Positions 624 to 26,700 of a DNA stretch of 64,000 bases are shown here, in pieces. The stretch is from Magallana gigas (Eukaryota): positions 53,568,001-53,632,000 of the forward strand of contig NC_088855.1 of assembly GCF_963853765.1 (NCBI RefSeq), given 5' to 3'. Numbering within the stretch: the first letter of the stretch is position 1; every line of letters starts with the position of its first letter. The notes below the pieces were generated by a model. That model made no database searches and was not told the origin of the DNA. It was given only the letters and a program-made list of their open reading frames with translations. A program made the position numbers and the translations under genes.

Positions 624-2621
624 ACAACATGACAAATAGCTGAAAGTTGTAGATTTGACCGCAATATTTCTTAAAATTGAATATGGTGATTTTTTAAGAA
701 AAGACAATTTTTGATGGTTCGTGACTCTAGCTCTTTGAAAAAAACCTTTTGACTTAAAACACAAAAACAAAATGTTAAATTTTATTCATTTTATTTTTAT
801 TCATTTTATTTTCCTTTCATTTTATTTTATCATTTATGGGAGTTATTTTAAATTATTAAATGTTTTATGTCACAAAAAGAGACTATGATATACCTCTGCA
901 TTCAATGGAAAACTTCATAAAATATGAATAACTAGAAATGACGTAGTAAATTTTGCAACGTCCAATCATGCAATGCCATGACTATGTAAATAATTTTTGG
1001 ACAAATACCATGCAATTCTATAAATAATCTGGAGGTTTCCTTCTTTTTTCATTAATATTAATATACTATTTTACTATAAAACGCATACAAATTAAAATAA
1101 ACCCCGTCGCCGCTGTGCGTATAATCCACAATTTAAGCAAAGTGCTTCCGTATCAAGGGCAATGAATCAAGACGACCAAATTAAGACGTTAAATATGCAA
1201 ATATCCATTTAAGTTTCGTATTTTTATCTTAAGGAGCATACTTTTCACAGAGTATTCCCAAGATTTCCCATTTATCTTTTTAGTGTATGCTTTATTGCAC
1301 TTTGCATGTTTTTGTGTTTAGTACCATATTTTTGTTACAAGTGACATATATATATATAAGGTGTGAAGGGACGGGTGAACCTTATTAATGTAATAAAAGG
1401 CAATGATATACAGTTTAAGAATACACAATACATTGTACCTGTACACATATCACGATAAAAAATTGATTACATACACATGATCTATAATATGGTTTATAAT
1501 ACGAGGTCGGTAAATTCCATAAAGGGTGAGAGGGCATACCAGGTAAGAGCAGAGCTTTATAATTGAATACGATCATATCTTACCCACTGCATTTGTACAA
1601 ATGGCAAATAATAAACAATTAAATTATAACGTTTTATAGCTTAGATTTACAAGTTTCAATCAGGGTACAAAACCTGATATACGTGTATTCTTTTTTCTTA
1701 TTCAGCAAGAATATTAATTTTAAAAAAACTGGCTATAATAAACTGCAATCAATTGCTCACTTTTCCTTATTCACGTGGTTTTCCATTGTGTGTTGACTAG
1801 AAATGTTTACAATTACACCATATCGTAAATTTGATATGATTTTTAAAAACGTTGGAGTTAGCATGGTAAGAAACATTAGATATTTTAATATAGTATGGAA
1901 TAACTACTATAACTTTTTTGTGCGAATTGTGGGATTTTTTTTTTATCAACAAACAAAACCACACTGGTCATTATAAAGCCATAAAAACAATTTTTTAATA
2001 AATTTAAGTTGATCAAACTCAAACTTTTATATAATCGCTGCCCGATATGGATAAATTGTTCTCTATTGAATGATTTTGTACAGATATTAAACAGAGTTTA
2101 AAATTTAATTTAAGTAGATTGGAGAGGGTTATTAAATTGCAAGCATTTGTTAATTCATTTGCATGAACAAGAAATATTTCATGAAATACTATAAAGTATA
2201 TCTAAAACATTCGAGAACAAACCTATGGTGGTATATTTTGTATAGGCTTAGACAGTTGAACAATGGCAACGGAACAAGATAGACAAGAAACTCAACGGTA
2301 ATGAAATGGAAAGCGACGGAACAATAACCTTGAGGATAATGGAAGGGAACGGATAAAACTTATTTCCTCTTAAGAAGGAAAATATAGTGTTCGTAAAAAA
2401 AAAATTCGAAGAAATATTTGGAATATTTTTATTTAATTCTAATATAAGAGGTTCATATGCAATAATTAAAATTTCTCATTGTTCTCAGCTTTAAAGGTTT
2501 ATGAACAAAAGGAACGAAAACTAATATAAACTAAAATTACATCTTTGTTTTGGGTTTTTAATACATAAATGACCTACATTTCATTATGTTTTCAATAGCT
2601 AAGAGAACAAAGTAGCATTAG

Positions 2622-2627
<6 letters not shown>

Positions 2628-2686
<59 letters not shown>
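2628..2686. repeat. (CT)n microsatellite
   Basis: Uninterrupted run of about 29 ct units. Confidence 0.97.
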
Positions 2687-2688
<2 letters not shown>

Positions 2689-4688
2689 AGTTGTTGTAAA
2701 TATACATGTACATTGTATTTTATTTGCAATTAATTAGCTCTAGCCAGTTTCTTATTTTCTGTTTGCAGTCAATATTTCTTATTTATATAAAAGAAAGTTT
2801 ATATTAAGTTATATATATCTACGCATGTAATTCTATTCTGTTTAATATAATTTGTAATTGTATTTTTAAAAAGTATGATATTCTAGTTACAATGTATTTC
2901 AAATGCAAACCGTTTACATGCAATGCAAACAAGAAAATACCATGCAAAGGTATTTAATATTATGTAAAATGCATATGTGTAATGATAGAAAATATTAGCA
3001 TACAAATGAAATGAAATATAATTTCATGAACACATGTGCATTATTTATGCTATGATATATATCTATAATTGTGTAATAGTTTTGCCTAGATTTCTCCTTT
3101 TAGAGTAAATACCATCGGACCATGTGGTCGGTCCAACAGTCATTGCTTGTGCTGTTTTAACGAGTCAGTTTTTCAGTCGGTATGCATAATGCATGTGTCT
3201 TTCCTCTTTTTCCTTTACTTTTTAATATATGTTTTTATAGCATTTCATAAATCTTGACTATGTTTGAAGTTTTGTGTTTTAATCAGACAAGATTTATAAA
3301 CAAGTCAGTGGTTTTTGTATTTTGGCTGTATTCGTTCAAACAAACGCGGCCAAAGCCTTCTAATGGTGCTAAACGCATTTTATCTTGCTTAAAAAAAATG
3401 AGGGTCAGTTCGAAATCCAAATTTAATTAATCACAAATGATTGTTAAGCATATGATCAAATTAACGATGCATGTCATTCAGAAAGTTTCGTTTGAAAACA
3501 ACAATATCCCAGTAATGCACAATTTACGTGTAAAAGATTTTAAAAAATTCTAATTTGATTTTTTAAAAATTATTTTATTGAAATACAAATGGATTGGGTA
3601 ATAGGTAAATCCTGTGTCAATTTTGTTAGATTCATGCTAACACATTCTTTTCCTAATATCAAATTCAATTTGCCTGTCAAATTACGGGACCGGGCGACCG
3701 TCGGTCGAGGTATAACAGGTTCTAAAAGATGGAGTAGGAATACCTTCATAAAGCATTATTTTGTGTGTGGTTAATTGATATGTAGATCAAGTTCTCACAA
3801 TCATTTAATGCCCACACGGGCTACATAGATCCATCCCATCAGAAAACAAATGTTGTGGTGTTTGCATAATTAGTTAAGCATTTAGATTTTGTGCAGTCTT
3901 TACAGAAAGTTATGATTACAAATAGGACTTGGGCATTAGGTCAGAATAGGATAGGATTGTCCTTGATTTACAAGACAGAACTGGTTCAACATTCCATTAG
4001 TTGATCTCTGCAGTATAATTGACCCAGAAGATATACAGAGGCGGTGGGTAGGTAGCTTACCGAAATACGTATGCCTCTTGATTGTCCAGGGAAGGTGATT
4101 CCAATGTTTCAAAGGTATTTTGCAATTATAAGTGAACAGTAAGCTTTTGTAAAAATTCAAGTGCATGTATGTAGTTTTTTTGTATATGGATATGAAAAGG
4201 TGGCATTTGCAGAGAACTGGTGTTCGTGGATTTCATTTGCATCATTTTTTTTCAAATTTAAAAGTAAGTACTGATTTCTATATGCAGATCCTTTCAAATG
4301 TTTCACATGATTTGTATAAAAGTCATTAATATTTATTTCTCCAATTGAAATTTAGTGTCAAGATTTTATCTGTGAGATTTCCGTAAAGTTGTAGGATGCC
4401 ACTCCGCTTTCTACTACCCAACTTTCACGAAGGTATCTTGTATTTATTGTAATGTAAAAGGTTTTAAATTCCATATGATGAATGGGAAAGCTCAATTCGT
4501 ATTTACTCCAAAACAAAACAAAAGTGCAACAAGTTGTGTTTAAGTTGGACAATATAACGGTACATATCATTCCAATGAAACCGATTCTTGGAATTGCGAG
4601 AAACAACTTAAAATCGTGCGGAGATTCCAGCACGGACAGTCTGATTTAAATCTGCACACAAAGTCGACACTAACGTATGGAAATCCAG

Positions 4689-4880
4689 ACCAGCACAGTT
4701 TGTCCGATATCACATACTCCCACTAACGTGCGGGACCAGCACAGTTTGTCCGATATCACATACTCCCACTAACGTGCGGGACCAGCACAGTTTGTCCGAT
4801 ATCACATACTCCCACTAACGTGCGGGACCAGCACAGTTTGTCCGATATCACATACTCCCACTAACGTGCGGGACCAGCAC
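4689..4880. repeat. 46-bp tandem repeat, 4 identical copies plus a partial copy
   Basis: Unit accagcacagtttgtccgatatcacatactcccactaacgtgcggg starts at 4689, 4735, 4781 and 4827. Degenerate ctaacgt...cagcac copies flank it on both sides. Confidence 0.95.
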
Positions 4881-7800
4881 GGAAAGCTCAACATGACGCA
4901 CTCTACGCTAACGTGCGGAGTTGCAGCACAATTAGCCCAGCTGTGCTCTGAAACTATTTTCTTTTACATTTTTTTTTTACAGGAATTGCTCTTTTTTCGA
5001 TTACAGAGGTCGTTTAGTCATGCCAGAAAAAATTACATTACACATATAGCTGTCCATATAAATTCACTCTTCCATTGTCCAGCAATAATTTAATTTGCTT
5101 GGAGATTGATTTAAGTAGATATCGAAGACTAGTGTCAGTGGAATAAACATTTTTGTCACATGAAAGTTTTTTTTTTTTCAATTTCCAATTGAAACTGGAA
5201 TATGGAATAACATAGAAAGATGTCTTAGAATTTGTTCATTATGTAATGAAAATACATTGGATGACGAATACCACTTTGTTATAGAATGTCATCAGGCATG
5301 TTTTTAGTCCGCAAAAAATTACATGTAATTGATAAAAAATACTCAACAAATGTTTACACTTTTATAAATGTGGGAATCTTATGGATACCATAGATATTGA
5401 TTTATAGGAAAAATTGTACATATTTAAAAAAAATTAGCTCGATTTATCTAAATTTCTGTACTCTTCCTTCTTTTGTACATTTGAGAATATTTTCCGGATT
5501 TTTTTGTACCTCATATGCCATTGATGTGGTTTGAGTAAAATAAACAATCATTCACAGTTGTTTGTTTGTTTTTTTCTCTGTACAAACTACTACATACGTC
5601 TATCAAACTGAGAAAAAACTCGAAGTTATTTTCTCATAGCGGCTGGTACATTTTAAATCTAAAACCTGTTACATAAAAAGTTTAAAATCAAAGATAAAAC
5701 AATCACTCTCACAGCCTTAACGAACTTTGTCCCGGAGCGGGTGTGGCGGAAGCGAGCTTATGGTGGCCCGATCCCTTCTCACGACATTTGGAGGGTCATG
5801 ATAACGGCCAGAAGACGATTGGTGGCGGCGATTAGTGGCTCGGGGACTATTGTTTATCTGCAGCTAAGAGTTTCCTACAAGAAGTTAAGGGTTCCAAGTC
5901 CAGTCTGGAGTTTCCGGTCCTGGGACCGAGTCTGATATCGAGGGGATATAGCGGGGTTTGGACCTTACTTACATAGTGAATTTAAAGAATCTTACAAAAA
6001 CTTTTAAAATGCTAAAGAAAAATGAATACATGTATTTGCTTCACTTGATAACGGAAGTCAAAATTTCTTTGATTATTCAAGTTTTTGCAGACTAATTTGA
6101 ATAGAAATGCATAATTAAATTTATACTATGGAAAGCAGAAATAAGCATTTTAAAGTAAATCGTACGCGCTAAGACCCTGGCCTACTATAAAACCTTAGTC
6201 AACTTTATCGGACGTATAAAAATTACACTCAACCTTATAGTAAAAGCAGCCAAGAGAATGAAAAAAATTGAAAGTAATTAATTACATGTATTTACGACCG
6301 GAGAAAATCAAACATACCGACGGACAACCGGACTAATATACTAGTATAGAAAGAAACGCACCACTTGACCACAATTCAATGAACAACTATACACCCTCCA
6401 CAGGAAAAACCCACTGATTCGGTGTATTATATTGTGGATCAGCAGTCTGAAACAAAAGCCATACTCTCTATTAACCCTGACCTATTTGTTCAAGCACTCT
6501 CTGTAATGATTGATTACGTAAAGCTACTACGCGTGAGACAGTGCGTGAAAACGGGAAATCCCCTTATACATCCTATTACTTTATGCTGATTCAAAACATC
6601 TTGGGTTTGTAAATAACAGCTATATACGAGTTTGTAGCTTATCATGTCTTTAAATCTGTCTGAAATTTACTCAGAAATATCCCTTACGAAATCATGCAAA
6701 TGCAATAGGGCCTACAGATATAAAAATATATATACTGTATATATTTACAGTTCGTTAGATCGTTATCGTCGATTTATAAAAAGAAGAATTTAATAAGATG
6801 GTGGTTTTTATGGATTTTCAACCGTGAGCTTGTTAAATACAATAGATGGTGGTTATGGCACTGTATGCTGTTAACTTGCTGGTTGCAATCTTGGGCCTTT
6901 TTTGTGCCACAAACACCAAATCAACATTTTTTTTTGCGATCCTGACGTTTTGGTATCGTTGGTTGTGGCTGAGGTTTTGTGAGTAGTTTATATTGGTACT
7001 CTGTCGTTCAACCATTGGTTGTCGGGTTTGTTTTCATATGTTTCGTGAGTTTTGGTTGTTTTTGTTAATTTGTTGGTTTGTTTCATATTGTTGATGTTGA
7101 TGTTTTGAGTGTTTTATTTGTATGTTCTTATCTTTTAGGTATTGGTTGTAGCCCTACAGGTTGTTGTTTGTCTCATTTCGTTGATTTGGTTTTTAATTAT
7201 AGATACTTTATTGTTCGATTGTTGGTTTATTGGTTAGAGACTTTGTTTTTTCTTCTTCTTCATTTGGTATCGATTATTAGATATATTGTGTTCTAGGGGT
7301 GGTTTTCATAGGTACTATGTCGCTCAGCTTGTAAGTACCAATTCTGGCTCTGGTAAGATTTCGTTGATAATAGTAAAAGGTGGTTATGTAGATTGTGTAT
7401 TCACACCTGTTAAGTGAAATGTTGATTGGAGTTGGTATAGGTATGGTGACGAAAAAGAATAAATGACAATTTTACGCAGTACAGTGTACTTGAGATTCTC
7501 AGATTTTGATTTTTTTTAAAATCCCTGTGTAAATATCGTTGACTGTAAAAACTGCGCACATACCTTTAACAGTTGTTTATCATTTACTCAATATCTTGCA
7601 CGTATACATACCCAATGATAGGATATTTTAACCTACTATAATATTTATGTACAATGCATATCAAATTGTACCCCTTCTTCAATCTTTCCCCTCTCAAACG
7701 TATAATTGCCAACATTGTGCTGACATTCACAATATAAACAACGGTGTTGAAGTGGTTTTCTGTTCCAAGAAAAAAGTAGGACATTTGTGGTGTCCGACAT

Positions 7801-8033: not shown

Positions 8034-10298
8034 ATAATGTTCTAACATTAATATTATTCATGAAATGTTCTAGCAGTACTTTATGTAATGTTCTAACAAT
8101 ACTTCATGTACTGTTTTAAACAATACTTCATGTACATGTAATGTGCTAACAATACTTCATGTAATGTTCTAACAATACTTCATGTAATGTTCTAACAATA
8201 CTTCATGTACATGTAATGTTCTAACAATACTTCATGTACTGTTCTAACAATACTTCGTGTAATGTTCTAACAATACTTCATGTAATGTTCTAACAATACT
8301 TCATGTACATGTAATGTTCTAACAATACTTCATGTAATGTTCTAACAATACTTCATGTACATGTAATGTTCTAACAATACTTCATGTAATGTTCTAACAA
8401 AACTTCATGTACATGTAATGTTCTAACAATACTTCATGTAATGTTCTAACAATACTTCATGTACATGTAATGTTCTAACAATACTTCATGTACATGTAAT
8501 GTTCTAACAAAACTTCATGTAATGTTCTAACAATACTTCATGTACATGTAATGTTCTAACAATACTTCATGTACTGTTCTAACAATACTTCGTGTAATGT
8601 TCTAACAATACTTCATGTAATGTTCTAACAATACTTCATGTACATGTAATGTTCTAACAATACTTCATGTAATGTTCTAACAATACTTCATGTACATGTA
8701 ATGTTCTAACAATACTTCATGTACATGTAATGTTCTAACAATACTTCATGTATAATGTTCTAACAATACTTCATGTACATGTAATGTTCTAACAATACTT
8801 CATGTAATGTTCTAACAATACTTCATGTACATGTAATGTGCTAACAATACTTCATGTACTGTTCTAACAATACTTCATGTACATGTAATGTGCTAACAAT
8901 ACTTCATGTACTGTTCTAACAATACTTCATGTAATGTTCTAACAATACTTCATGTAATGTTCTAACAATACTTCATGTAATGTTCTAACAATACTTCATG
9001 TACATGTAATGTTCTAACAATACTTCATGTAATGTTCTAACAATACTTCATGTACATGTAATGTTCTAACAATACTTCATGTAATGTTCTAACAATACTT
9101 CTTGTAATGTTCTAACAATATTTCATGTACATGTATTGTTCTAACAATACTTCATGTAATGTTCTAACAATACTTCATGTACATGTAATGTTCTAACAAA
9201 ACTTCATGTACATGTAATGTTCTAACAATACTTCATGTACATGTAATGTTCTAACAATACTTCATGTACATGTAATGTTCTAACAATACTTCATGTAATG
9301 TTCTAACAATACTTCATGTAATGTTCTAACAATATTTCATGTACATGTATTTTTCTAACAATACTTCATGTAATGTTCTAACAATACTTCATGTACATGT
9401 AATGTTCTAACAATACTTCATGTACTGTTTTAAACAATACTTCATGTACATGTAATGTTCTAACAATACTTCATGTACATGTAATGTTCTAACAATACTT
9501 CATGTACTGTTTTAAACAATACTTCATGTAATGTTCTAAACAATACTTCATGTACATGTAATGTTCTAACAATACTTCATGTAATGTTCTAACAATACTT
9601 CATGTAATGTTCTAACAATACTTCATGTACTGTTCTAACAATACTTCATGTAATGTTCTAACAATACTTCATGTACTGTTTTAAACAATACTTCATGTAC
9701 TGTTTTAAACAATACTTCATGTACATGTAATGTGCTAACAATACTTCATGTAATGTTCTAACAATACTTCATGTACTGTTTTAAACAATACTTCATGTAA
9801 TGTTCTAACAATACTTCGTGTAATGTTTTAAACAATACTTCATGTACATGTAATGTGCTAACAATACTTCATGTACTGTTCTAACAATACTTCATGTAAT
9901 GTTCTAACAATACTTCATGTACTGTTTTAAACAATACTTCGTGTAATGTTCTAACAATATTTCGTGTAATGTTCTAACAATACTTCATGTACTGTTCTAA
10001 CAATACTTCATGTAATGTTCTAACAATACTTCATGTAATGTTCTAACAATACTTCATGTACTGTTCTAACAATACTTCATGTACTGTTTTAAACAATACT
10101 TCGTGTAATGTTCTAACAATACTTCGTGTAATGTTCTAACAATACTTCATGTACTGTTCTAACAATACTTCATGTAATGTTCTAACAATACTTCATGTAA
10201 TGTTCTAACAATATTTCATGTTATGTTCTAACAATACTTCATGTAATGTTCTAACAATATTTCATGTACATGTAATGTTCTAACAATACTTCGTGTAA
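8034..10298. repeat. Minisatellite of about 2.26 kb with interleaved 23/24/29-bp variant units (about 90 units)
   Basis: Core atgtaatgttctaacaatacttc (23 bp). Variants add atgtac (29 bp) or read atgtactgttttaaacaatacttc (24 bp). There are no unique spacers. Confidence 0.97.
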
Positions 10299-13053: not shown

Positions 13054-13839
13054 TCAGCTCTTCGCGACTTTTGCAATGTTTTCTGGGAGATTGGCACCAT
13101 TTGAGATCACAAAGTCTTTCAATAGTTCAAGCTGCTTTGTAACATTGTCCAGTTTACCTTTTAGCTGCATGTTTTCCGATTCTAGATACTGCAGGCGATT
13201 TTCCATTTCCACCTGCTTCAGCTTAGCCTTTTCACGACATTTGCGAATTGCAAGATTATTTCTCGCTCTCTTTTCGAAATATTCACGGGTACCTTTTTCT
13301 GGCTGCCTCTTCTTTTTCACCGGTCCGCCAGCTGAGGGTTTCCTACCTGGTCGTCCCCGGGGGCGAGGGGTATAATCTACGTCCATAGGACTAGGGGGTG
13401 GGGTCACAAAGGAAGAGATATCCTGATCGGAGCTATCCGAATCCTCGTTAGATCCGGACAGGGAATTTTCCAGCTCACCGTCAGAACTCACTGACCCCGT
13501 GGAGTGAAGAGTTTCTCTGACCGACTGTAAACACGAGGAGACCTGGTCCGGATTAAGCACAAATTCCAAGTTCTCGTACCGGCTGAGCTGTGCGATCAGG
13601 GCCTGGTCAGGCACGGCCTGGGTCTGCACGGTGACCGGGGCAGCGTTTACCAGCGTGGTGAAGGCTTCGTTTCCAGACACGCTCTGGACAATGTCATTAG
13701 ATTTTATATCCAGAATGAGTTTCTCCAGCGTCTCGTCATTCACCTGTGTGGAATTGTTGAAAAGTTCTTGGATATCCACAGAATTTTCCAGCACCGGGTC
13801 CAAATCGAATGGGGTTCTTTCCATCATAATCTGTGACAT
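13054..13839 (-). CDS. C/EBP: CCAAT/enhancer-binding protein, activator (alpha/beta/delta) class, paralog A; intronless, 261 aa from the first ATG
   Basis: bZIP EYFEKRARNNLAIRKCREKAK plus leucine zipper. N-terminal ENSVDIQELFNNSTQVNDETL resembles the C/EBP-alpha activation box [26 protein letters not shown] phospho-motif. The ORF track starts at a GTG (13875); the first ATG is at 13839. Candidate polyA signal at 12301-12306. Confidence 0.93.
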   Translation of the reverse strand: MSQIMMERTPFDLDPVLENSVDIQELFNNSTQVNDETLEKLILDIKSNDIVQSVSGNEAFTTLVNAAPVTVQTQAVPDQALIAQLSRYENLEFVLNPDQVSSCLQSVRETLHSTGSVSSDGELENSLSGSNEDSDSSDQDISSFVTPPPSPMDVDYTPRPRGRPGRKPSAGGPVKKKRQPEKGTREYFEKRARNNLAIRKCREKAKLKQVEMENRLQYLESENMQLKGKLDNVTKQLELLKDFVISNGANLPENIAKVAKS

Positions 13840-13874
13840 GCAGTAATGTATTGGAGCGGCCGCTGCTAATACCA

Positions 13875-13883
13875 CTAGGCCAT
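13875..13883 (-). other. Two-codon out-of-frame uORF (ATG GCC TAG) in the 5' leader of C/EBP paralog A
   Basis: The only ATG between the predicted TSS (about 13950) and the main ATG. It lies 44 nt upstream of the main ATG and is out of frame. Confidence 0.6.
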
Positions 13884-13977
13884 CCGGGAGGCTCGGCTAT
13901 GCGGCTTGAGAGAGTTTGCTCGATGTATTCGCTACGACGGTAATCCAAGGATTGCGGTTTTCCTGGCCGGCCTTTAA

Positions 13978-14172
13978 ATTTATATTGACTAGCGCTCAGG
14001 TAAACCCCAAGATAGGGTATTACTAATGCAACATGTGACGCTTAGCGTTGCTACACCAGTGACGTCACTTTATTTTGAAATGTTCGGTCTACTGTAGCAA
14101 AACAAATAACCACCTTGAAGAATAAAAGTAGGTTATGTATATTAGAAGTGTAAAAATAGCTTGATGACGTCA
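13978..14172 (-). promoter_or_regulatory. Promoter of C/EBP paralog A: TATA box, two full CREs and a half CRE
   Basis: TATAAAT on the minus strand at 13978-13984; TGACG at 14036-14040; palindrome AGTGACGTCACT at 14058-14069; TGACGTCA at 14165-14172. Confidence 0.75.
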
Positions 14173-15833
14173 GAAGTTCTATTTTAAGCATATATACATA
14201 CTGCCAAAATATTTAAACACCACTATAGTAATTGTATATACATGTATATATTTATATAGATAATTTTTTTCCTTTCTCATATTTCTTTAACGTCCCCCTT
14301 TCAATCTACCGATACTTGAATAGCAAAAGATTTGTTTATAGGCCTTAGAACAACCCGGGCAAACTGAAGTACCGGTACGTCGCAAAATCAAGCTACGGGT
14401 ATTGAGACAATAATACTACGCACTATGTGTTCTGACTGTCTAGATGGACCAGTGGAGTTGTTAAATCCATAAGGAAATGATATTTGTGTGTAAATTTAAC
14501 CCACTAGATATAGTTGATATCTCCTATAAGAATATCAGGGTCCGGTTTTTCAAGTCAATTCTATTCGTTTATTCGCCTAAAACCATATAAATGGGACAAG
14601 AGGTACAGTAATGGTACATAAACATATTTACATATATACAAACAGTCTGGATGAGCAGAACTGGATAATTTTGCTTGCAGAAAACAGACGATCACATAAA
14701 AAGTTAGCTATGAAAATACAAAGATTTTATAAATGCAGAGTTGGTATTTGACAATAAATTACAGAACTTATAACATTTATTTCTAATTTAGAGCCAAGAG
14801 CAGAGTATGAAATATGAAATTATTACAGTAATAAGAAATAGATAAGTCAATGCATAGTATAACAATTAATAATTGACATTGCTCATTCCAACAATGTTCT
14901 TGTACTATTTCAGTTAATTAAAAGGAATACAATCTGAAAAAGTGTATGACAACTATAACATGTTATCATTTTTATATTTATGTGTAAATGTTTCTAATCA
15001 AATCAACAATTTATTCTCAACTTATGGTACATTTTCAATCTTGATTGATTGTCGCTCGAGATCGTGAACTGTTGATACATGTACGTTGCTTTATATATAT
15101 TTATATACAAGCATTTTATATGTACTTTTTGCCTGGAGTCTCTGGTGTGAAAACTCTAGACAAACAATAGTGTTCTTTATTGTAGTCCCCATCTACTTTA
15201 ACTTATCCACTTATGTTACTTATGAATACCACAAATAAACGGATTATCGCATTAATCTTATTGTATCGGCTGGGAAATCCCGAATGAACAGAGAATCACG
15301 GGATATTGTGAAGTCATTATTCAGAACGGGTCATAAACTAGAACACCTTTCATGCCCGGGAATGCTGTAGATTGCCATGACAACAGGTAAATAATGAGTA
15401 AACAAATCAATGCCGACGACACGCAGCATCCGATCATATGTACTCCTGTGTTCTAATATACATCCGCCAGGGTCAGGGAAAAATCGTTATCCGGGATCTG
15501 CAGCTCCCGTAAATTTGGTTCCATTATTATCTGTGTAATGTCCTTGTAGCTAGTTTTGTGAAAAAAATCTCAAATTTCACCAACTAATTCCTGGCGTATT
15601 TAGACGTCCTGAAATATTTAAAAGGAAACTGTTAATGTTGCGGAGATCAGAAATGAGGCTTTGTTTTGGGCGTTTGCAGACATTGCAAACAACGTCGCAC
15701 GAGTGATCTCTCTTGAACGACAATCTCAAAAAATTTAGGTTTATTATGTATCGCTGTACTTGCATGTCATATTTAACTTACTGAATTCGAAGAAAAATTG
15801 CAATAGAATTTGTTCACAAATTACAAGCATGTA

Positions 15834-15993
15834 CATGCACGGATCCAGAAATTTTTTCCACGGGGGTCCTAAGGATATTTGAGTTTTCAATTGGGTGGGG
15901 GGGGGGGGAGGGGGGTATATTTTTGGTAATTTTACCAACGTTTGTAAATTTATAAAAATTGAATTTGCCATGCCCCTCTTCTAGATCCGCGCA
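15834..15993. mobile_element. Short non-autonomous element with gcacggatc...gatccgcgc termini and a poly-G tract
   Basis: Inverted termini catgcacggatcc / gatccgcgca. Related fragments occur near 34720, 37985 and 45568. Confidence 0.6.
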
Positions 15994-17066
15994 GGAAGTG
16001 ATCACAAAACGATTTAACGCCCTCACATTTAACAATTGCTAATTGTTAAACATTAAAAAAAATGTCACCCCCCCCCCCATAAAAAAATCAAATAACACTC
16101 GCTGACCAAATTTTGTTAAATCTAGAATAATTATATTGCTTTTTTTTCTAATTTGTATATTGAAAACTTTCATACGTTATCGTTATGTCGGCGCGCGATA
16201 TTCATTTTTATAAAATTGATAAACAGCAAATGATTGCACGCGTGACAGCTACATGTACGGTTTCAAAGGATGGGGAGTGACGGACTTCCTTTGAAAATTA
16301 GCCCCCTCCCTAGGAGGAGCAAATAAATAACCCCCTTTTATGGTTAAGTACGAGCTACTTTTATGGTGGACTTGTTAATTGCTCCAACTGATTTTTCAGT
16401 CTTAATCAAAATTTCCGAATGCTTTATCTGTCTTCGATACATAAAATAGAGGTCACGCCCCATCTGAATAAACGTTTATCTTTTACTCTCATTTTGCGAT
16501 TGTTTTACGGATAATTATAGTGGTTTTTCATGTTTGTTTGTTTACTTGCATGTGTTAGTTCATCATCAAAAATCAAGATTTTAAGAAATTAATCATTTTG
16601 CTCATTGATATTCCGGATTTGAAAAGACATCAAGCAAGAGGGAGTGCCAATGATCTAATATTATTCATTGTAAAAGGGGGATGACAGTCATTGCTTGATC
16701 AACCTGAATAACACTTGTGCATTCCATCGCCAATGGAAAAACCTAGTGAGTGTCACACACGTGTTTCCATTAGAGACAGTGACTTTATAGTTAAAGATTA
16801 TTGTAAAATAAAATAAGACGAGAGTAAATGTTAATATTTCATTTTTAATGATACATTTAAGTAAAAAAGTTAATAAGTATTTAAAAATACAACAACAATA
16901 ACTTGTTACTTCAACAGCATTGTCGCCGTTCAGTTCTGTGTTTGTACAATTTTTACAAGTAAAAAAGATCAAGTTTATACTATCTACATGGTAAACAGTG
17001 TCACTATATACAGGAAAACCCGAACAGACATCGGGCCTTATCACTCGTCTATTGCTTGATCGTGTG

Positions 17067-17999
17067 TCACCTGGACATGATTTCGTCGAACTTTGTGGGT
17101 AAGGAGGCTCCAACATTGATGAATAAACTTTTGAGCACATTAAGTTCTTTTGTTAGTAAGTCTAATTTCTTTTGTAAGTTTTCGTTTTCTGTTGACAATT
17201 CGTGCACTCTTTGTTCGGTCTCTTGCTGCTTTTTCTTCGCCTTGTCCCGGCTTTTTCTCACTGCGAGATTGTTCCTCACTCGCTTGTCTACATATTCTTC
17301 AGTGCCCTTGGGTGGCTGTTTCTTTCGGTTTGGTCTGAGGGGTCCGGCGGCGGATGGCTTCCTACCAGGACGGCCACGAACTATTTCAAAAGGTGAGGTG
17401 GGAGGGGTGAGAGTCGATGATGTGACGTCGTGCTCCGATTGAGAGGGAGAGTTCACGATACTCTCGATGTCACACGTGCTGTATTCCTCCCCCTCACTGG
17501 CCGACCAGCCGGCCTCCGATATCTTTGATGTTTGCTCTTGGTTTGTCATAAAGTCAAATTCTTTGAATGTAGGCAACACACTGTCTTGTGCAGGTTGCAG
17601 TTCAATAAATGGGACACCCGTAACTGGGTCAGCGGTCTTCTCCCCCAAAATGATGTTCACTAAAGTGGCGTCGTTTACTTGTGTGCTATTGTTCAGTAGT
17701 TGTCGAATGTCGACTGAATTCTCTAAGAGCGGGTCCAAATCAAACTGGCCCTGACTATCTTGCAGAATAGTTGAAACTTTCTTACTTTGCTCAGAATCGT
17801 AGAGTACCGATTCCATCAAATTTTCTTGTGGACATGGTGAACCAGGGAAAATGTTTTCGTCAAATGAAAATACTGGGAAATCCAGCGCCTCAGATTGAGT
17901 GTTCACACCCAAAACAGACTCGAGAGTCTGTAAAACGTTTACACGCGAATCTTGAAGATTGCGGTTGTTTCGTTGGTTCACACCGGAGTTGTTAGACAT
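17067..17999 (-). CDS. C/EBP: CCAAT/enhancer-binding protein, activator class, paralog B; intronless, 310 aa
   Basis: Canonical basic region EYVDKRVRNNLAVRKSRDKAK plus zipper. Shares FDLDPxLENSVDIxxLxNNSTQVNDxTL, TPPxSP and RGRPGRKPSA blocks with paralog A. The true start may be M1 (17999) or M62 (17816). Confidence 0.93.
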   Translation of the reverse strand: MSNNSGVNQRNNRNLQDSRVNVLQTLESVLGVNTQSEALDFPVFSFDENIFPGSPCPQENLMESVLYDSEQSKKVSTILQDSQGQFDLDPLLENSVDIRQLLNNSTQVNDATLVNIILGEKTADPVTGVPFIELQPAQDSVLPTFKEFDFMTNQEQTSKISEAGWSASEGEEYSTCDIESIVNSPSQSEHDVTSSTLTPPTSPFEIVRGRPGRKPSAAGPLRPNRKKQPPKGTEEYVDKRVRNNLAVRKSRDKAKKKQQETEQRVHELSTENENLQKKLDLLTKELNVLKSLFINVGASLPTKFDEIMSR

Positions 18000-18028
18000 G
18001 CCAATGACGAAACATCGTTGGCTCAGGG

Positions 18029-18626
18029 TATATATAGAATTTGTCCGAAGGAGAGGTGGATTAATACGCGAAAGTGTTTCGTTCCTTTTTTAATAAATAA
18101 TGCATTACCTCGATATGAAACCCTTTTAAAGTTAAGAAAGTGTTACTTGAAACTAAAGTTTTATTATTAAAAAGTGGTGGCAACAATTATGTACTCTATA
18201 TTAATTAGCAATGAAGGAACTATTTTTATCTCGTATTAACTTTTTGAAACGCGATTCGGATTGTGTTAGAATATGATGTAAGGAGAAACATATCTGATTG
18301 GTTCTTAGAATAGAGATTACCATGCTCTTCTGACGTCAATTGAAATGGAAAACTCCCAAATTAATCTCGTGTGTTACTGTAAATTCGAGAAGTGTTTCGA
18401 ACAAAAGGATTTCCTAAGCTACACTGGTTCTCCTCTCCGTTCGGAAGTTATTGATAAGCTGTACTTATAATCATATATGACCATTGCAGACTTCTTATGA
18501 CTGATAGATAATTCACCCCCTTATATCTACTTATATTGTGTATGTGTTGTCAGAGATCAGCACTTTAGGCTTGTCGTACAATGTCTGTATGTATAAACAT
18601 ACTTGTATTTATAGTAATTTACGCAA
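18029..18626 (-). promoter_or_regulatory. Promoter of C/EBP paralog B: TATA, CARE-like site, CCAAT, CRE and C/EBP site
   Basis: TATATATA at 18029-18036; TGATGTAAG at 18274-18282; ATTGG at 18297-18301; TGACGTCA at 18331-18338; TTACGCAA at 18619-18626. Confidence 0.6.
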
Positions 18627-19490
18627 CAATATTTCGATATAGAAAAACACCCGCACTTTTAAGTCTAAACTACAGTAATACATGCATTATTAGTCGAGTT
18701 TAATACAAATATACGTATGTTCTAAAATATATCTCTTTATTTTAGTGTAAAATCGTTAAATAATCAGTACTCTGTATTATAGACAAGTATATTCTTAGTT
18801 GGAAACCCTTAAATTCAATCAATCATACTGATTTAAATGCAAAACTCCAAATAGCGTAGCATTTCCTATTTAAAAAGTTCATTAAAAGTAGGCATTATTG
18901 ACAATTTTCTTCAAAATATATCTCAGGTACATGGGTACCCTTTAAAGAGATGAGAGATATCAATATATTCATTGTTTATCAATCGTCATATAAAATTATA
19001 AAAGTTCAATATGAGAGATTTTTCTCCATGGTCGATCATACGAATGTTTTCTAGTACGAGTAAATGAATGTGAACTAGCCTGGTTCCCTGACTTCATGAC
19101 TAAATAAAGAAAGAAAACCAGGCAATGACAAGAACCAGTATTGGAAATTCCAAAAATCTAACGATCCATTCTTTCGCCAGAGGTCGCGCAAGCTTCGCTG
19201 TAACAGCAATCGGTAATCATCGGTTGTTTCCGTATATCGTACTCGGTACATCTCGGTCGATTGTTTGATGTCACTAGCGGAATCTATCGAGGCTTCCCGA
19301 ATGGGAACCGGAAACAACCGTGGATCGTCGATTAATGAATGTAATTTGTTTATATTTAAAAAAAAAGAAAAAGTATGAATATATTTACAATGTTCATGAA
19401 ATAAGTGTGTTGAAATAATTTACATAATTTGACCGGTTGCAGCAGTCTGCACTGAATACAGGAAGTGAGAATCGATTGGTGAAGCAGTTT

Positions 19491-19932
19491 ATTGCATCAC
19501 AGATTAAATTGCATGGAAGGCCATTAGTATACAGTGTACATTTGGAAGGATATTCTGTTCAAAATCCCGAGTGAATGTCAGGTGAGTGCATGGTATATAA
19601 TATAATACCCAGTCATTAATGAAACAAGTTATAATATTTTGATTTTGACGAGTTATTCGTGTTACTTTTGGTTTGTTGATATTGACAATTCTACTTCCGG
19701 TTTTTGATTTTGCAATCAAATATTCAATTGTTCTTTACAAAATTGCTTCACTGCTCGTTTCTTCTAAATTTAATTAATACAAATAACTATTATCAATAGT
19801 TTTGTTAAACAATTAATATCTTTGAGACTACATCTTGCTCAAACCTGAGGGTTGAAATCTTATTGCATCAGGTTCTAAATCAAGAGAAAGGGAGAACACT
19901 CCGATATTACTATCTTTAGTTCATGATGCAAT
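19491..19932. promoter_or_regulatory. Three perfect C/EBP-ATF response elements (TGATGCAAT) at the 5' end of C/EBP-gamma
   Basis: attgcatca at 19491-19499 and 19862-19870; tgatgcaat at 19924-19932; one-mismatch attgcttca at 19742-19750. Confidence 0.75.
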
Positions 19933-19955
19933 ATCTTTTTGTTTCAGATAAAAAG

Positions 19956-20333
19956 ATGGCACCAAAGCGTCCTGATTATGAGGGTTCAGATGGAGAGTCA
20001 TATGGTAAACCATCGAAACGTTCAAGAATGATGGAGAAAGACACAGATGAATATCTCAAAAGGAGAGAAAGAAATAACATTGCTGTTAAAAAGAGCAGGG
20101 AGCGTTCAAGACAAAAAGCCAAGGAAACAATCGAGCAAGTTAATAGGTTGAGGGCAGAAAATGAAATGTTGGAACAGAAGGTTGAAATTCTTTCAAAAGA
20201 ACTTAGTGTTTTAAAGGACTTATTTTTGGCTCATGCCGGCAATGTTGCCCAGTCAGAGCGTGCCATAGAAGCAACAGAATCAAGAGCTCCTATTCCCGAT
20301 CATCAGTACAGCTCATCAAAACAAAAACAGTGA
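19956..20333 (+). CDS. CEBPG: C/EBP-gamma (short bZIP without an activation domain), 125 aa; possibly 130 aa from a spliced upstream ATG
   Basis: DEYLKRRERNNIAVKKSRERSRQK...LRAENEMLEQKVEILSKELSVLKDLFLAHA. Acceptor tttgtttcag ends at 19947 and donor CAG|GTGAGT starts the intron at 19582. An ATG at 19575 splices in frame (MSDKKM). The ORF-track start at 19923 is intronic. AATAAA at 20490 and 20634. Confidence 0.93.
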   Translation: MAPKRPDYEGSDGESYGKPSKRSRMMEKDTDEYLKRRERNNIAVKKSRERSRQKAKETIEQVNRLRAENEMLEQKVEILSKELSVLKDLFLAHAGNVAQSERAIEATESRAPIPDHQYSSSKQKQ

Positions 20334-23743: not shown

Positions 23744-26700
23744 CTAGTCTTCCCACTGCATGACTTTGTGGGTTGCATTTCTCCGTTTTTTCTTTAACCA
23801 CGACGGGAGACCTCTATTTTCGAGCTGGAGCCTATAGAGGGGGTATTTGGGATCAGTGCTAGGTTTAAATGGGTGCACAGTCTTCAGCTTTTCCTGTAAC
23901 ACCTCCTCATTAATGTCCTTGATGTCTCTATACCTATCTAAATACCTGAAGAAGAACAAAAGGAACAAATTGAATTGAGCTGTCTTCAAAAGACATAAAA
24001 CACCTCAAGGCTCTGAGCATGTTAAAATCAAAACATCCATCTGCTTCCCTGTTTTTCGATGTGTCTCGACATTAAAAACCAGGAGCAGATGGAAGTATTA
24101 ATTTTTATCAGATTGTTGCTATCCGGACCTAGATAATAATGAGGTTGCTTACTACGGTTTCATTTATTGTAGAGCAACAATTTACTTGGATTTTTTTGTT
24201 GGGTCTCTCCACAAAACGAATTTTTATTGAAATAAGGTATCAGTATGTGACAACAGAATTCATTTATAGGACCTCCAACCATCGTCCATTAAGTTGCATA
24301 CATCCTGATTTTTACTAATAACCAATAATATTCATGAAACCGCTCCAACTCCAGGATGACAAGACCCAAATATTTATCATTTTCATTACCGTATTAAATA
24401 AATGATGGCGAAAGTGTAAACAATTGAGATTTTACTGGTATGTCAAAATGTTGATAGTTATTTTTAGTTTTATCACATTGATCCTCAAAGTCGTTCACAA
24501 GTAACAATTAAAGTTGAAGATGAGAAAACTGATCAAAGACAATCTACCCCCCCCCCCCAATCTCCTATCATTGGGATATGAAAATGATGTATTAGGGAGC
24601 TAAAGCCACCCAGTAGAAGCATACATACAAGTTAAATGGTTTTTTGTGTGGAAACTTCTTCTGTATTGGATGATATGGTACAGGGAAAACAAATTCAAAA
24701 GACGGCTCCTTCATATCTAAAACAAAAATTCAAAGTGTTCAGGGTCACAGTCCATTGAATCTTTACATACAGCATACTGTTCTTCCTTATTTTATGCAAG
24801 AACTTTATTCAGCAAGTCCACCGTTTGTGTAAATAAATATATAGTCCTGAGTACAAAACTTTTACCGCGGTAATACAATTTCATATGGTTCACAAGTTTC
24901 AGAAAAATAATAGCTAAATTTTAAAATGACAAAGGGTTGCTTCTTGCAATTTTATGCAGATATTAAATTCATTCTTTTAGTCAGTGATCTACAGTATAAA
25001 ATATATGCTGGTTACCAGGAACTGAATACTTGGAACTCTTATACAACATCAAACAATATCATATTTAGATTGAATTGAGACCTATCATTGCTTTCCCTCA
25101 ATACTTTTATCCATTAAAAACTTCTGGTCAAAATCTTACCCAGTTTGTTCCAGAATACATCCCGAACACTCTCATCATGCTCACTTTGAAAGAAACAGAA
25201 ACCTGCAGGGGTCATGTGATCCTGGTGTCTCTCGTAAAAGTTAAAGGTATTGAATGTCCTCTCCTTTAGAGAGCATCTGTAACAAAAGTAAGATATTTTC
25301 AAAAAATTGAAAACAATCTCTTTAGTTTTGTATTGAGTAAATCTTTTAATTTAAAGCAATATGAGCTGTATTTTTTAGAATTGTATTTTGCTACAAAAAA
25401 CTGCTAGTATGATAAGTCTGCATGTAACTTAAACTTTTATGATAAATAAGATTTGAAAAATCATTAATTTTTGTCAGAAGAAAGATTTCTCTTCTAAGGA
25501 AAATATAGGAGATCAATTTTTGTACAGGACAACAATAATTCAATTTTGCTTCAATTAAGGCTTCTTAACAGCTTTTCCCACATAAATATAAATACCATGA
25601 TATTTTTTGTCATTTTAGTAGAAAATAACATTTTCTTCTTAAAAAATTTCAGCATGAATTGCAGCTCATATTGCTTTAAAAAAATGGATCAAAGCATCAT
25701 AGAATTCATGAAAAATGTATTCAATATCAAACATTTTCAATTGGCCCATGTCCTTAAAGGTTACCTGAACATAAAACAAACTTGGGATAAGTAAGATCAA
25801 CAGAAAAAAGGAGAGAGATCATGATGATTTACATGTAGTTTTTGCAATACATGTATTTGATTTCTGGTGGTACAGGTATGTTACGTTCAAAGATGACCCC
25901 CTATAGCATTGTTTAAGGCACCATATACAAACTGGTCTCCAGACATGAATAAGTATTAAGATGTGTTTAAAATTGTAAAGACAATATCATAAATATTCCA
26001 GCAAGAGGAGTTGGAGGAAGACCACCTTATGATTCCTAACTACATGTTCTCTTTTCACACACAGTGAATAACAGAAGATTGGAAGTGGTTGCAATGTATC
26101 ACCTGAAAAACTCCATCTTTGCTAGCCAAGATGGCAAAACTCAAGTAACAAACAATAGAAAAGAGCACATAACTGCCTTACGTGTTTGGGGATAGCCTGT
26201 CATCTCTGAAGTCAATTTGCTGTTCCTGTTTGAAGAGAATAAATACATAACGATGGAAACCAGTGCCTTTGACAGGAAAAACTTGCAGATAATCACAGAG
26301 TTGTTCCCCTTTACTAATGTCATTTCCTGGTATGTTGGCTCTGAAAAATAAAAACAACTTGATTGACCTAATACATGTATATGATTTCATTATGTTTATT
26401 AAATCAAGAGGCCCATGGACCATCTCACTCACCTGACTTACAGTTGTGCTTATTTTTGTATTCCTTCGTACATTTTAATGAAAACTTGAATAATACATGT
26501 AGTTAAACACTCACTTTTGGATATTACATAAGAAAATGTTCCAAAATACATGAACATGGACTTTACTGGTATATTCACACTAGTCAGTGGAGGTACTTGA
26601 CACTTACACTAGTCAGTAAATGAACTTGATACTTACATTAGCCAGTAAAGGAACTTGACACTTACACTAGCCAGTAAAGGAACTTGAAACTTACACTAGC

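What the first reader, a model, noticed from the sequence alone, without database searches (positions are those of the whole stretch)
13054..20333. Compact three-gene C/EBP cassette: two activator paralogs head-to-head with C/EBP-gamma, mirroring the vertebrate CEBPA-CEBPG arrangement
Seen: three C/EBP bZIP genes within 7.3 kb; two are intronless on the minus strand and gamma is on the plus strand with a 5' intron, sharing about 1.6-2 kb of upstream DNA with paralog B. Known: human CEBPA (intronless) and CEBPG (5'-UTR intron) are divergent neighbours on 19q13, and gamma is a preferred heterodimer partner that lacks an activation domain. Inference: the linkage predates the protostome-deuterostome split, with a later tandem duplication of the activator. 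The cassette could be a self-contained circuit with cAMP input on A and B, stress input on gamma, and output tuned by dimer choice.
Basis: partly seen in the sequence, partly recalled or inferred. Interest (0 to 1): 0.8.

Follow-up and report, generated by a model that had tools for sequence, protein, structure and literature searches.

The report
Ancient C/EBP and C/EBP-gamma gene pair
An oyster carries three related C/EBP gene-switch genes side by side, and the back-to-back pairing of a full-length C/EBP with the short C/EBP-gamma recurs in limpet, lamp shell, starfish, acorn worm, amphioxus and fish, so the arrangement is probably over half a billion years old.

Summary
The window has exactly three C/EBP-type bZIP genes in 7.3 kb.

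- **A:** 13054-13839 (-), 261 aa.
- **B:** 17067-17999 (-), 310 aa.
- **Gamma:** CDS 19956-20333 (+), 125 aa, behind a predicted 5'-UTR intron (19583-19947).

In a bZIP tree, gamma falls in a 100/100 clade with vertebrate CEBPG. A and B fall with the full-length C/EBPs and carry the C/EBP-alpha-type activation box, which every gamma lacks.

The head-to-head activator/gamma pair, 0.9-7.3 kb ATG to ATG, was found in all 10 genomes sampled from five phyla: four oysters and pearl oysters, Patella, Lingula, Asterias, Glandiceps, amphioxus and turbot. Mouse has the pair 64 kb apart (literature). It is absent in the one arthropod sampled, a mite. Flanking genes differ between phyla.

The gamma/B/A array is shared by Crassostrea, Saccostrea, Ostrea and Pinctada, so the tandem duplication predates the oyster/pearl-oyster split. 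A further A-like paralog lies outside the window.

The proposed circuit rests on motifs only:
- Three perfect ATF4-C/EBP response elements, conserved in ostreids only.
- cAMP response elements upstream of A and B.

I found no paper describing the deep linkage. Near notes of this scan on this same window cover its motifs; the linkage itself was not noted before.

The parts
13054..13839 (-). C/EBP paralog A: single-exon CDS, 261 aa. It has the N-terminal activation box (ENSVDIQELF...), an RGRPGRKP motif, and a bZIP with a divergent basic region (NNLAIRKCR) and Val at the third zipper d position.
   Evidence: Clade with Ostrea, Saccostrea, C. virginica and Pinctada A-type genes at 100/99.
14060..14172 (.). 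Two perfect CRE octamers (TGACGTCA at 14060 and 14165), 221 and 326 bp upstream of the A ATG.
   Evidence: 5 in the window against 0.72 expected. A CRE at a similar distance upstream of A is present in Ostrea, Saccostrea and Pinctada.
17067..17999 (-). C/EBP paralog B: single-exon CDS, 310 aa. This is the slowly evolving copy, with a canonical basic region (NNLAVRKSR), four zipper leucines and the activation box ENSVDIRQLL.
18267..18374 (.). Conserved B promoter block. It holds a CRE (18331-18338; TTACGTCA in Ostrea and Saccostrea), a GGGAGTTTTCC kappaB-like motif, a CCAAT box and a TTACATCA element.
19450..19582 (+). Predicted gamma promoter and non-coding exon 1. It holds an ETS-like GGAAGTG, an inverted CCAAT box (GATTGG) and CARE 1 (19491-19499). 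The TSS is not mapped.
   Evidence: block conserved in three ostreid genera.
19583..19947 (+). Predicted 5'-UTR intron of gamma. It contains a nearly invariant 54-bp block (19665-19718, with ETS-like and C/EBP-like TTGCAAT motifs), CARE 2 (19862-19870) and CARE 3 (19924-19932).
   Evidence: No RNA evidence.
19956..20333 (+). C/EBP-gamma CDS, 125 aa. The bZIP starts about residue 30 and there is no activation box. It has the gamma-type zipper end KELSVLKDLFLAHAG and a C-terminal DHQY motif.

Best explanation
This is the oyster C/EBP locus. Its core is an ancient, divergently transcribed pair of paralogs. One is a full-length C/EBP with a single-exon CDS and an N-terminal activation box (gene B). 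The other is the short C/EBP-gamma, which lacks the activation box and has its whole CDS in the last exon behind a 5'-UTR intron.

The pair most likely arose by an inverted tandem duplication before the protostome/deuterostome split. It has stayed head-to-head ever since; vertebrate CEBPA-CEBPG is the same pair.

In the common ancestor of true oysters and pearl oysters, the activator was duplicated in tandem. This produced the fast-evolving paralog A, with Cys and Ile at DNA-contacting positions and an altered zipper.

Inferred, not shown: the three proteins cross-dimerise through a shared zipper register with Asn at a2. Gamma would act as a partner or attenuator without an activation domain. 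The shared, motif-rich intergenic DNA (CRE-type sites for A and B, an ATF4-C/EBP CARE cluster for gamma) would feed second-messenger and integrated-stress signals into the ratio of the three. Selection on that shared regulatory DNA would be what keeps the pair together.
For: Identity:
- All three proteins match bZIP_2, and the best solved structures are the C/EBP-beta and C/EBP-alpha bZIPs.

Orthology:
- The gamma/activator split has 100/100 support, with vertebrate CEBPG inside the gamma side.
- The amphioxus gamma query hits vertebrate CEBPG first.
- The activation box [E/D]xS[I/V]D[I/L] is present in A, B, and the scallop, starfish, acorn-worm, amphioxus and turbot activators. It is absent from all 28 gammas.

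Linkage, always divergent:
- Branchiostoma, Asterias, Patella, Glandiceps, Lingula, turbot, Ostrea, Pinctada and Saccostrea.
- Sinanodonta has adjacent locus tags.
- In mouse, Cebpg lies 64 kb upstream of Cebpa (PMC4777376).
- Flanking genes differ in every phylum (same calls), so only the pair was retained.

Duplication:
- The gamma/B/A order is identical in four genera.
- The A clade has 100/99 support and a long stem.

Regulation:
- All 3 TGATGCAAT sites of the 64-kb window lie within 442 bp at the gamma 5' end. They are position-conserved in Ostrea and Saccostrea.
- TGACGTCA occurs 5 times against 0.72 expected, and 3 of these lie in the A and B promoters.
- In mammals CEBPA represses CEBPG, and a CEBPA enhancer contacts the CEBPG promoter (PMC8284328).
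Against: - Transcription, the TSS, the intron and any co-regulation are therefore unverified.
- The pair is unlinked in the mite, so the linkage is dispensable in at least one lineage.
- The CARE cluster is not found in Pinctada, Patella, Lingula or the deuterostome intergenic regions. The stress input may therefore be an ostreid feature rather than the reason for ancient retention.
- The tree rests on 70 columns and has no outgroup.
- Very short intergenic distances could lower the breakage rate without any selection.
- Annelids, other ecdysozoans and cnidarians were not sampled.
Confidence: 0.87

Rival explanations
1. The adjacency is ancestral but selectively neutral. The two genes stayed together only because the gap between them is tiny and few breakpoints fell in it. 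No shared regulation or functional coupling is involved.
For: Intergenic distances are only 0.9-7.3 kb. The mite lost the linkage without losing gamma. The simple motifs I scanned (CARE, CRE, C/EBP palindrome) show no shared pattern between phyla in the intergenic DNA.
Against: Every other neighbour in the fetched loci differs between phyla, whereas this pair and its orientation survive in 10 of 11 genomes sampled, plus mouse. In mouse the pair persists even with 64 kb between the genes. Mammalian data show cross-regulation and enhancer-promoter contact across the pair.
Confidence: 0.3
2. The short gene arose repeatedly. Each lineage duplicated its C/EBP locally and truncated one copy, so the similar arrangement is convergent rather than inherited.
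For: Tandem duplication of C/EBP does happen in this locus (paralog A). Midpoint rooting draws the activators as a grade around the gamma clade.
Against: All short genes form one clade with 100/100 support and in 100% of bootstrap trees, together with vertebrate CEBPG. They share the zipper end KELSVLKDLFLxHA. Most invertebrate ones also share a C-terminal DHxY motif that no activator has.
Confidence: 0.03
3. Paralog A is a decaying duplicate, a pseudogene in the making, and not a working third member of the cassette.
For: A has a long branch (stem 0.79 changes per site), Cys for Ser and Ile for Val in the basic region, and Val at a zipper d position.
Against: The ORF is intact, of the same length and colinear in Crassostrea (two species), Saccostrea, Ostrea and Pinctada. 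The activation box and bZIP are conserved within the A clade at 85-91%. CREs upstream of A are conserved in all four genera.
Confidence: 0.05

Closest known systems
Vertebrate CEBPA-CEBPG locus (human 19q13.1, mouse chr 7)
   Same: A full-length C/EBP with a single-exon CDS lies head-to-head with the short C/EBP-gamma, whose CDS sits in one exon behind a 5' intron. The turbot locus fetched here shows this directly. Mouse Cebpg lies 64 kb upstream of Cebpa (PMC4777376). The orthology of gamma has 100/100 support.
   Different: The oyster gap is 2 kb rather than 7 kb (turbot) or 64 kb (mouse). The oyster has a second, and elsewhere a third, lineage-specific activator copy. Oyster gamma carries a C-terminal DHQY motif that the vertebrate proteins lack. 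Which vertebrate paralog (alpha, beta, delta or epsilon) is the positional heir was shown here only for the fish neighbour. I read that neighbour as alpha-like from its box and zipper end, which is an inference.
Aplysia ApC/EBP, the cAMP/CREB-induced immediate-early C/EBP of molluscs
   Same: Oyster B groups with the molluscan activators, including the Aplysia kurodai C/EBP (P0178). Its conserved promoter block contains a CRE-type site.
   Different: Inducibility by cAMP was not tested here. The perfect CRE of this window is TTACGTCA in Ostrea and Saccostrea.
CEBP/CEBPg split described by Jindrich and Degnan 2016 (PMC4736632)
   Same: That paper places the CEBP-CEBPg duplication on the bilaterian stem or just before it. 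My tree and the distribution of gamma agree.
   Different: The paper contains no occurrence of 'synteny', 'linked' or 'tandem'. The retained head-to-head arrangement is additional evidence that the split was a local inverted duplication.
Classical conserved paralog clusters and ancient microsyntenic pairs (Hox/ParaHox, NK, Fox and Wnt clusters)
   Same: Paralogous transcription-factor genes born by tandem duplication are kept adjacent across bilaterian phyla, while the surrounding genes are shuffled.
   Different: Only two genes are involved, they are of the bZIP class, and they lie in divergent orientation. No shared enhancer has been demonstrated. The comparison is from general knowledge, not tested here.

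Membership tests
C/EBP family, full-length (activator) class: genes A and B | bZIP_2 domain with the C/EBP basic-region signature (R-x-R-N-N-x-A-V-R-K-S-R) followed by a heptad leucine zipper | tested here: met
   Pfam PF07716: E 1e-15 for B and 3e-12 for A. B has the canonical signature. A deviates at two positions (Ile for Val, Cys for Ser) and has Val at the third zipper d position.
C/EBP family, full-length (activator) class: genes A and B | N-terminal conserved activation box shared with vertebrate C/EBP-alpha (…E-x-S-I-D-x-S-x-Y-I…) | tested here: met
   The motif is found in A (residue 30 of the ORF) and B (residue 93). It is also found in the scallop, starfish, acorn-worm, amphioxus and turbot activators, and in none of 28 gammas. 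Its activating function is inferred from vertebrate knowledge.
C/EBP family, full-length (activator) class: genes A and B | Falls on the activator side of the C/EBP tree | tested here: met
   The gamma/activator split has 100/100 support. B groups with Saccostrea and Ostrea B. A groups with the A-type genes of four genera.
C/EBP family, full-length (activator) class: genes A and B | Binds C/EBP sites and activates transcription | not testable with these tools
   No binding or reporter data are available.
C/EBP-gamma (CEBPG) orthology group: plus-strand gene | Groups with vertebrate CEBPG to the exclusion of other C/EBPs | tested here: met
   Clade of 28-29 gamma sequences, including 8 vertebrate CEBPG, with 100/100 support and in 100% of bootstrap trees.
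C/EBP-gamma (CEBPG) orthology group: plus-strand gene | Short protein that is little more than a bZIP, with no activation domain | tested here: met
   125 aa. The bZIP spans about residues 30-93 and there is no activation box.
C/EBP-gamma (CEBPG) orthology group: plus-strand gene | Gamma-type zipper (Glu at both g1 and e2; C-terminal KELSVLKDLFLxHA) | tested here: met
   Read from the sequences printed. The same residues occur in oyster, amphioxus and vertebrate gammas. The activators have Q or K at e2 and end in LF(I/T)NVG or a variant of it.
C/EBP-gamma (CEBPG) orthology group: plus-strand gene | Heterodimerises with other C/EBPs and ATF4 | not testable with these tools
   Only a zipper e/g-pair reading is available, which is an inference.
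Ancient bilaterian microsyntenic pair | Same two orthologues adjacent, in the same relative orientation, in several protostome and deuterostome phyla | tested here: met
   The divergent pair is present in Mollusca (5 genera), Brachiopoda, Echinodermata, Hemichordata and Chordata (amphioxus, turbot). It is absent in a mite.
Ancient bilaterian microsyntenic pair | Retention exceeds that of surrounding genes | tested here: met
   No flanking Pfam family is shared between phyla in the same loci. Only the PBP/MRPL38-like gene is shared, and only within molluscs. This is a small sample, not a genome-wide statistic.
Ancient bilaterian microsyntenic pair | Shared cis-regulation or co-regulation that explains the retention | not tested
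There is only motif evidence within oysters and mammalian literature.
ATF4/integrated-stress-response target with C/EBP-ATF composite elements (gamma gene) | Clustered CARE motifs (TGATGCAAT) at the promoter or first intron | tested here: met
   All 3 sites of the window lie at 19491-19932. They are position-conserved in Ostrea and Saccostrea and not conserved in other phyla.
ATF4/integrated-stress-response target with C/EBP-ATF composite elements (gamma gene) | Induced by stress through ATF4 binding | not testable with these tools
   No expression or ChIP data could be reached.

The most novel reading that the evidence does not exclude
The divergent C/EBP / C/EBP-gamma pair is an 'activator plus attenuator' unit more than 550 million years old. 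Its adjacency is held by selection because the shared intergenic DNA sets the ratio of the two partners, as hinted by CEBPA repressing CEBPG in mammals. That would make it one of the oldest conserved bidirectional pairs of transcription-factor paralogs. Pteriomorph bivalves then built on it: a 3-4 gene array with a new Cys-bearing DNA-binding variant, and an integrated-stress (CARE) entry point on gamma.
Probability: 0.3. Interest if true: 0.65.

Novelty: new member of a known kind. Interest (0 to 1): 0.5.

Why it matters
CEBPA and CEBPG are medically important neighbours. CEBPA loss de-represses CEBPG in myeloid leukaemia, yet why they are neighbours has not been asked in an evolutionary frame.

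This work shows the head-to-head pair is shared by molluscs, brachiopods, echinoderms, hemichordates, amphioxus and vertebrates. That turns a human-genome curiosity into a bilaterian-wide feature, and gives physical evidence that the CEBP/CEBPg split was a local inverted duplication.

It also offers compact invertebrate versions of the locus, with a 1-4 kb intergenic region against 64 kb in mouse. In these, shared regulation of an activator and its partner can be dissected directly.

For oyster biology, it defines a three-gene C/EBP array with candidate stress, immune and cAMP inputs.

Tried and rejected
- **RNA evidence.** I looked instead for spliced cDNA among the Logan contigs encoding gamma. 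L012 and L013 are colinear with the genome across the predicted intron, and L014 merely starts at 19955. That gives no splice evidence either way.
- **Lingula gamma isoform.** P0065 was not on record. The Lingula activator was used instead.
- **Mite.** Tyrophagus has no linked C/EBP within 10 kb of gamma.
- **CARE or CRE pattern across phyla.** I tested whether the gamma-proximal CARE cluster or any CRE pattern is conserved across phyla. It is not, so I do not claim an ancient stress input.
- **A fourth copy.** I looked for a fourth C/EBP-like gene in the window with the extra KCR-type paralogs. There is none.
- **Which vertebrate paralog.** The PDB comparison cannot tell whether the turbot neighbour is alpha or beta, because the solved constructs differ in length.
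- **Literature.** Searches for prior description of the deep linkage returned nothing relevant. The library lacks most subscription journals, so prior mention elsewhere cannot be excluded.
- **Not tried.** AlphaFold and structure searches were not used because the fold is not in question.
Full report
**What is there**

The window is AT-rich, about 33% GC. Between 13054 and 20333 it has three long ORFs with bZIP domains. All three match Pfam bZIP_2, with E-values from 1e-15 to 3e-12. The best solved-structure matches of the plus-strand protein are the C/EBP-beta and C/EBP-alpha bZIPs. A tblastn of the three bZIPs against the whole window finds these three genes and nothing else.

- **Gene A.** An uninterrupted ORF on the minus strand. 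The tool's GTG start at 13875 is a bacterial-code artefact. The first ATG is at 13839, giving 261 aa. That is the length of the Ostrea and Crassostrea virginica orthologues.
- **Gene B.** 17067-17999 (-), 310 aa.
- **Gamma.** The ORF begins at 19923, but the conserved protein starts at the ATG at 19956. That ATG is preceded by a pyrimidine tract and an AG at 19946-19947. A CAG|GTGAGT donor lies at 19583.

A and B are colinear paralogs, 41% identical over 253 aa.

**Organism**

B is 77-78% identical to the Saccostrea and Ostrea proteins. A is 85% identical to C. virginica XP_022344681. The window therefore comes from a Crassostrea/Magallana-type oyster other than C. virginica. The window's own proteins are listed without names by design.

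**Which C/EBPs they are**

I built a maximum-likelihood tree of the 70-residue bZIP from 57 proteins. They were the three oyster genes, named mollusc, brachiopod, echinoderm, hemichordate, amphioxus and mite proteins, eight vertebrate CEBPG, and the neighbours translated from the fetched loci.

- The branch separating gamma-type from full-length C/EBPs has 100/100 support and appears in all bootstrap trees. The oyster plus-strand gene lies inside the gamma side with vertebrate CEBPG (repeated with 63 rows).
- Used as a query, the amphioxus gamma finds vertebrate CEBPG as its best group of hits.
- The gammas share the zipper end KELSVLKDLFLxHA.
- The motif [E/D]-x-S-[I/V]-D-[I/L], which in the turbot neighbour reads [24 protein letters not shown], is present in A and B. 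It is also in the scallop, starfish, acorn-worm and amphioxus activators, and in none of the 28 gammas. From memory, this is the C/EBP-alpha activation box.

The labels 'activator' and 'gamma' are therefore justified by sequence. Function itself was not tested.

**The linkage test**

I fetched up to 10 kb on each side of gamma or of the activator in other genomes. A divergent (head-to-head) pair was found in every lophotrochozoan and deuterostome locus.

| Genome | Locus | Activator | Gamma |
|---|---|---|---|
| Branchiostoma lanceolatum | L001 | 3548-5745 (-) | 10001 (+) |
| Asterias rubens | L002 | 5446-6357 (-) | 10001 (+) |
| Patella caerulea | L003 | 6366-7124 (-) | 10001 (+) |
| Glandiceps talaboti | L004 | 4598-5623 (-) | 10001 (+) |
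| Lingula anatina | L007 | 10001 (+) | 8613-9143 (-) |
| Turbot | L008 | 1830-2738 (-), 302 aa | 10001 (+) |
| Ostrea edulis | L010 | see cassette below | |
| Pinctada imbricata | L015 | see cassette below | |
| Saccostrea cucullata | L016 | see cassette below | |

- Sinanodonta has consecutive locus tags for the two genes.
- ATG-to-ATG distances run from 857 bp (Lingula) to 7,262 bp (turbot).
- In mouse, Cebpg lies 64 kb upstream of Cebpa (PMC4777376).
- The only negative was the mite Tyrophagus, whose gamma sits among unrelated genes.
- Flanking genes are different in every phylum: adh_short, Gly_acyl_tr, DUF4502, Ras. This serves as a small internal control that the pair, and not the neighbourhood, was retained.
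- In most species the activator CDS has one exon. Amphioxus is the exception, with an intron inside the bZIP. The gamma CDS also has one exon.

The simplest reading is an inverted tandem duplication before the protostome/deuterostome split, kept ever since. This fits Jindrich and Degnan (PMC4736632), who date the CEBP/CEBPg split to the bilaterian stem or just before it. They say nothing about gene position.

**The third gene**

The order 'gamma, then B divergent from it, then A downstream of B' is identical in the window, Saccostrea, Ostrea and Pinctada.

- A-type genes form a 100/99 clade on a long stem.
- An exhaustive search with A found close relatives only in oyster-like and pearl-oyster-like clusters.
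- The duplication therefore predates the Ostreida/Pteriida split. No A-type gene appeared among the scallop, mussel or heterodont hits; this is weak negative evidence.

A keeps the activation box but has NNLAIRKCR in the basic region and Val at the third zipper d position.

Reading the heptads by hand from the sequences is an inference using the usual e/g-pair rules. On that reading:
- All three proteins share Asn at a2.
- Gamma has Glu at both g1 and e2, which is repulsive in a homodimer. Vertebrate gamma has the same.
- B has Gln at e2.
- A has Lys at e2 and an Arg/Glu pair at g0/e1, which would favour A homodimers and one attractive contact with gamma.

This is compatible with 'output tuned by dimer choice' but does not show it.

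**Regulatory DNA**

- **CARE sites.** TGATGCAAT, the C/EBP-ATF composite element, occurs three times in 64 kb, and all three lie between 19491 and 19932. Ostrea and Saccostrea have three sites at matching positions.
- **Other conserved features of the gamma 5' region.** The same alignment shows a conserved promoter block (ETS-like motif and inverted CCAAT box), a conserved donor and acceptor, and a 54-bp nearly invariant intronic block at 19665-19718.
- **CRE sites.** TGACGTCA occurs five times against 0.72 expected. Two lie upstream of A and one upstream of B. A CRE upstream of A is present in all four genera.
- **The B promoter.** The B site sits in a conserved promoter block. In Ostrea and Saccostrea it reads TTACGTCA, next to a kappaB-like motif and a CCAAT box.
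- **Limit of conservation.** None of these motif patterns is conserved in the intergenic DNA of other phyla.

The proposed cAMP and stress inputs are thus plausible for oysters only, and remain motif-level inference.

**What could not be done**

No reads could be laid, and transcription, the intron and co-expression are unverified. The Logan contigs I fetched as a substitute are unspliced.

**Comparison with what is known, and novelty**

The genes belong to well-known families and are annotated in related oysters. The vertebrate adjacency, and the repression of CEBPG by CEBPA, are in the literature. Five literature searches returned no paper describing the bilaterian-wide head-to-head arrangement. 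The library is incomplete, and synteny databases may already show it.

I rate this a new example of a known kind of thing: an ancient conserved paralog pair. It is of moderate interest. It is a solid, easily extended evolutionary observation with a link to a medically relevant locus, but it is not a new mechanism.

Noticed in passing
window 20298-20309 (gamma residues 115-118); also P0008, P0011, P0026, P0061, P0065, P0069, P0102 and others: A C-terminal D-H-x-Y motif about 10 residues from the end of C/EBP-gamma is present in 18 of 20 invertebrate gammas (molluscs, Lingula, acorn worm, starfish, amphioxus). It is absent from all 8 vertebrate CEBPG, the mite, the sea cucumber and all activators. 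Its function is unknown.
   Followed up: partly
outside the window; P0366 (C. virginica LOC111137718), P0357, P0384: There is a further C/EBP-like paralog with the same RPGRKP motif and KCR basic region as A but a different zipper. It is sister to the A clade (98/84, long branches). In C. virginica it lies on the same chromosome as the A orthologue. In a Pinctada-like ENA assembly it lies on the same 108-kb contig as the gamma, B-like and A-like genes. The locus may therefore have four members. None is in this window.
   Followed up: partly
window about 23747-26354 and beyond, minus strand: A PBP-domain (MRPL38-like) gene lies tail-to-tail after gamma. The same neighbour follows gamma in Patella (L003 14096-20387) and Pinctada (start of L015). 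The block C/EBP / gamma / MRPL38-like is therefore shared by bivalves and a gastropod.
   Followed up: partly
window 18290-18310 (minus-strand reading of the B promoter block): A GGGAGTTTTCC motif, Rel/NF-kappaB-like, is invariant among Crassostrea, Ostrea and Saccostrea just upstream of the CRE-type site of B. It may be an immune input.
   Followed up: no
window 19665-19718: A 54-bp block inside the predicted gamma intron is almost invariant across three oyster genera, while the surrounding intron is poorly alignable. It contains ETS-like CTTCCGG and C/EBP-like TTGCAAT motifs.
   Followed up: no
L001 3548-4096 (Branchiostoma activator): Unlike all other activators sampled, the amphioxus gene has an intron inside the bZIP. 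It lies between the basic region and the zipper (…ETQHK | VQELQ…), with GT/AG ends.
   Followed up: yes
window 51660-51809: A run of N (assembly gap or masked stretch). It was left untouched.
   Followed up: no
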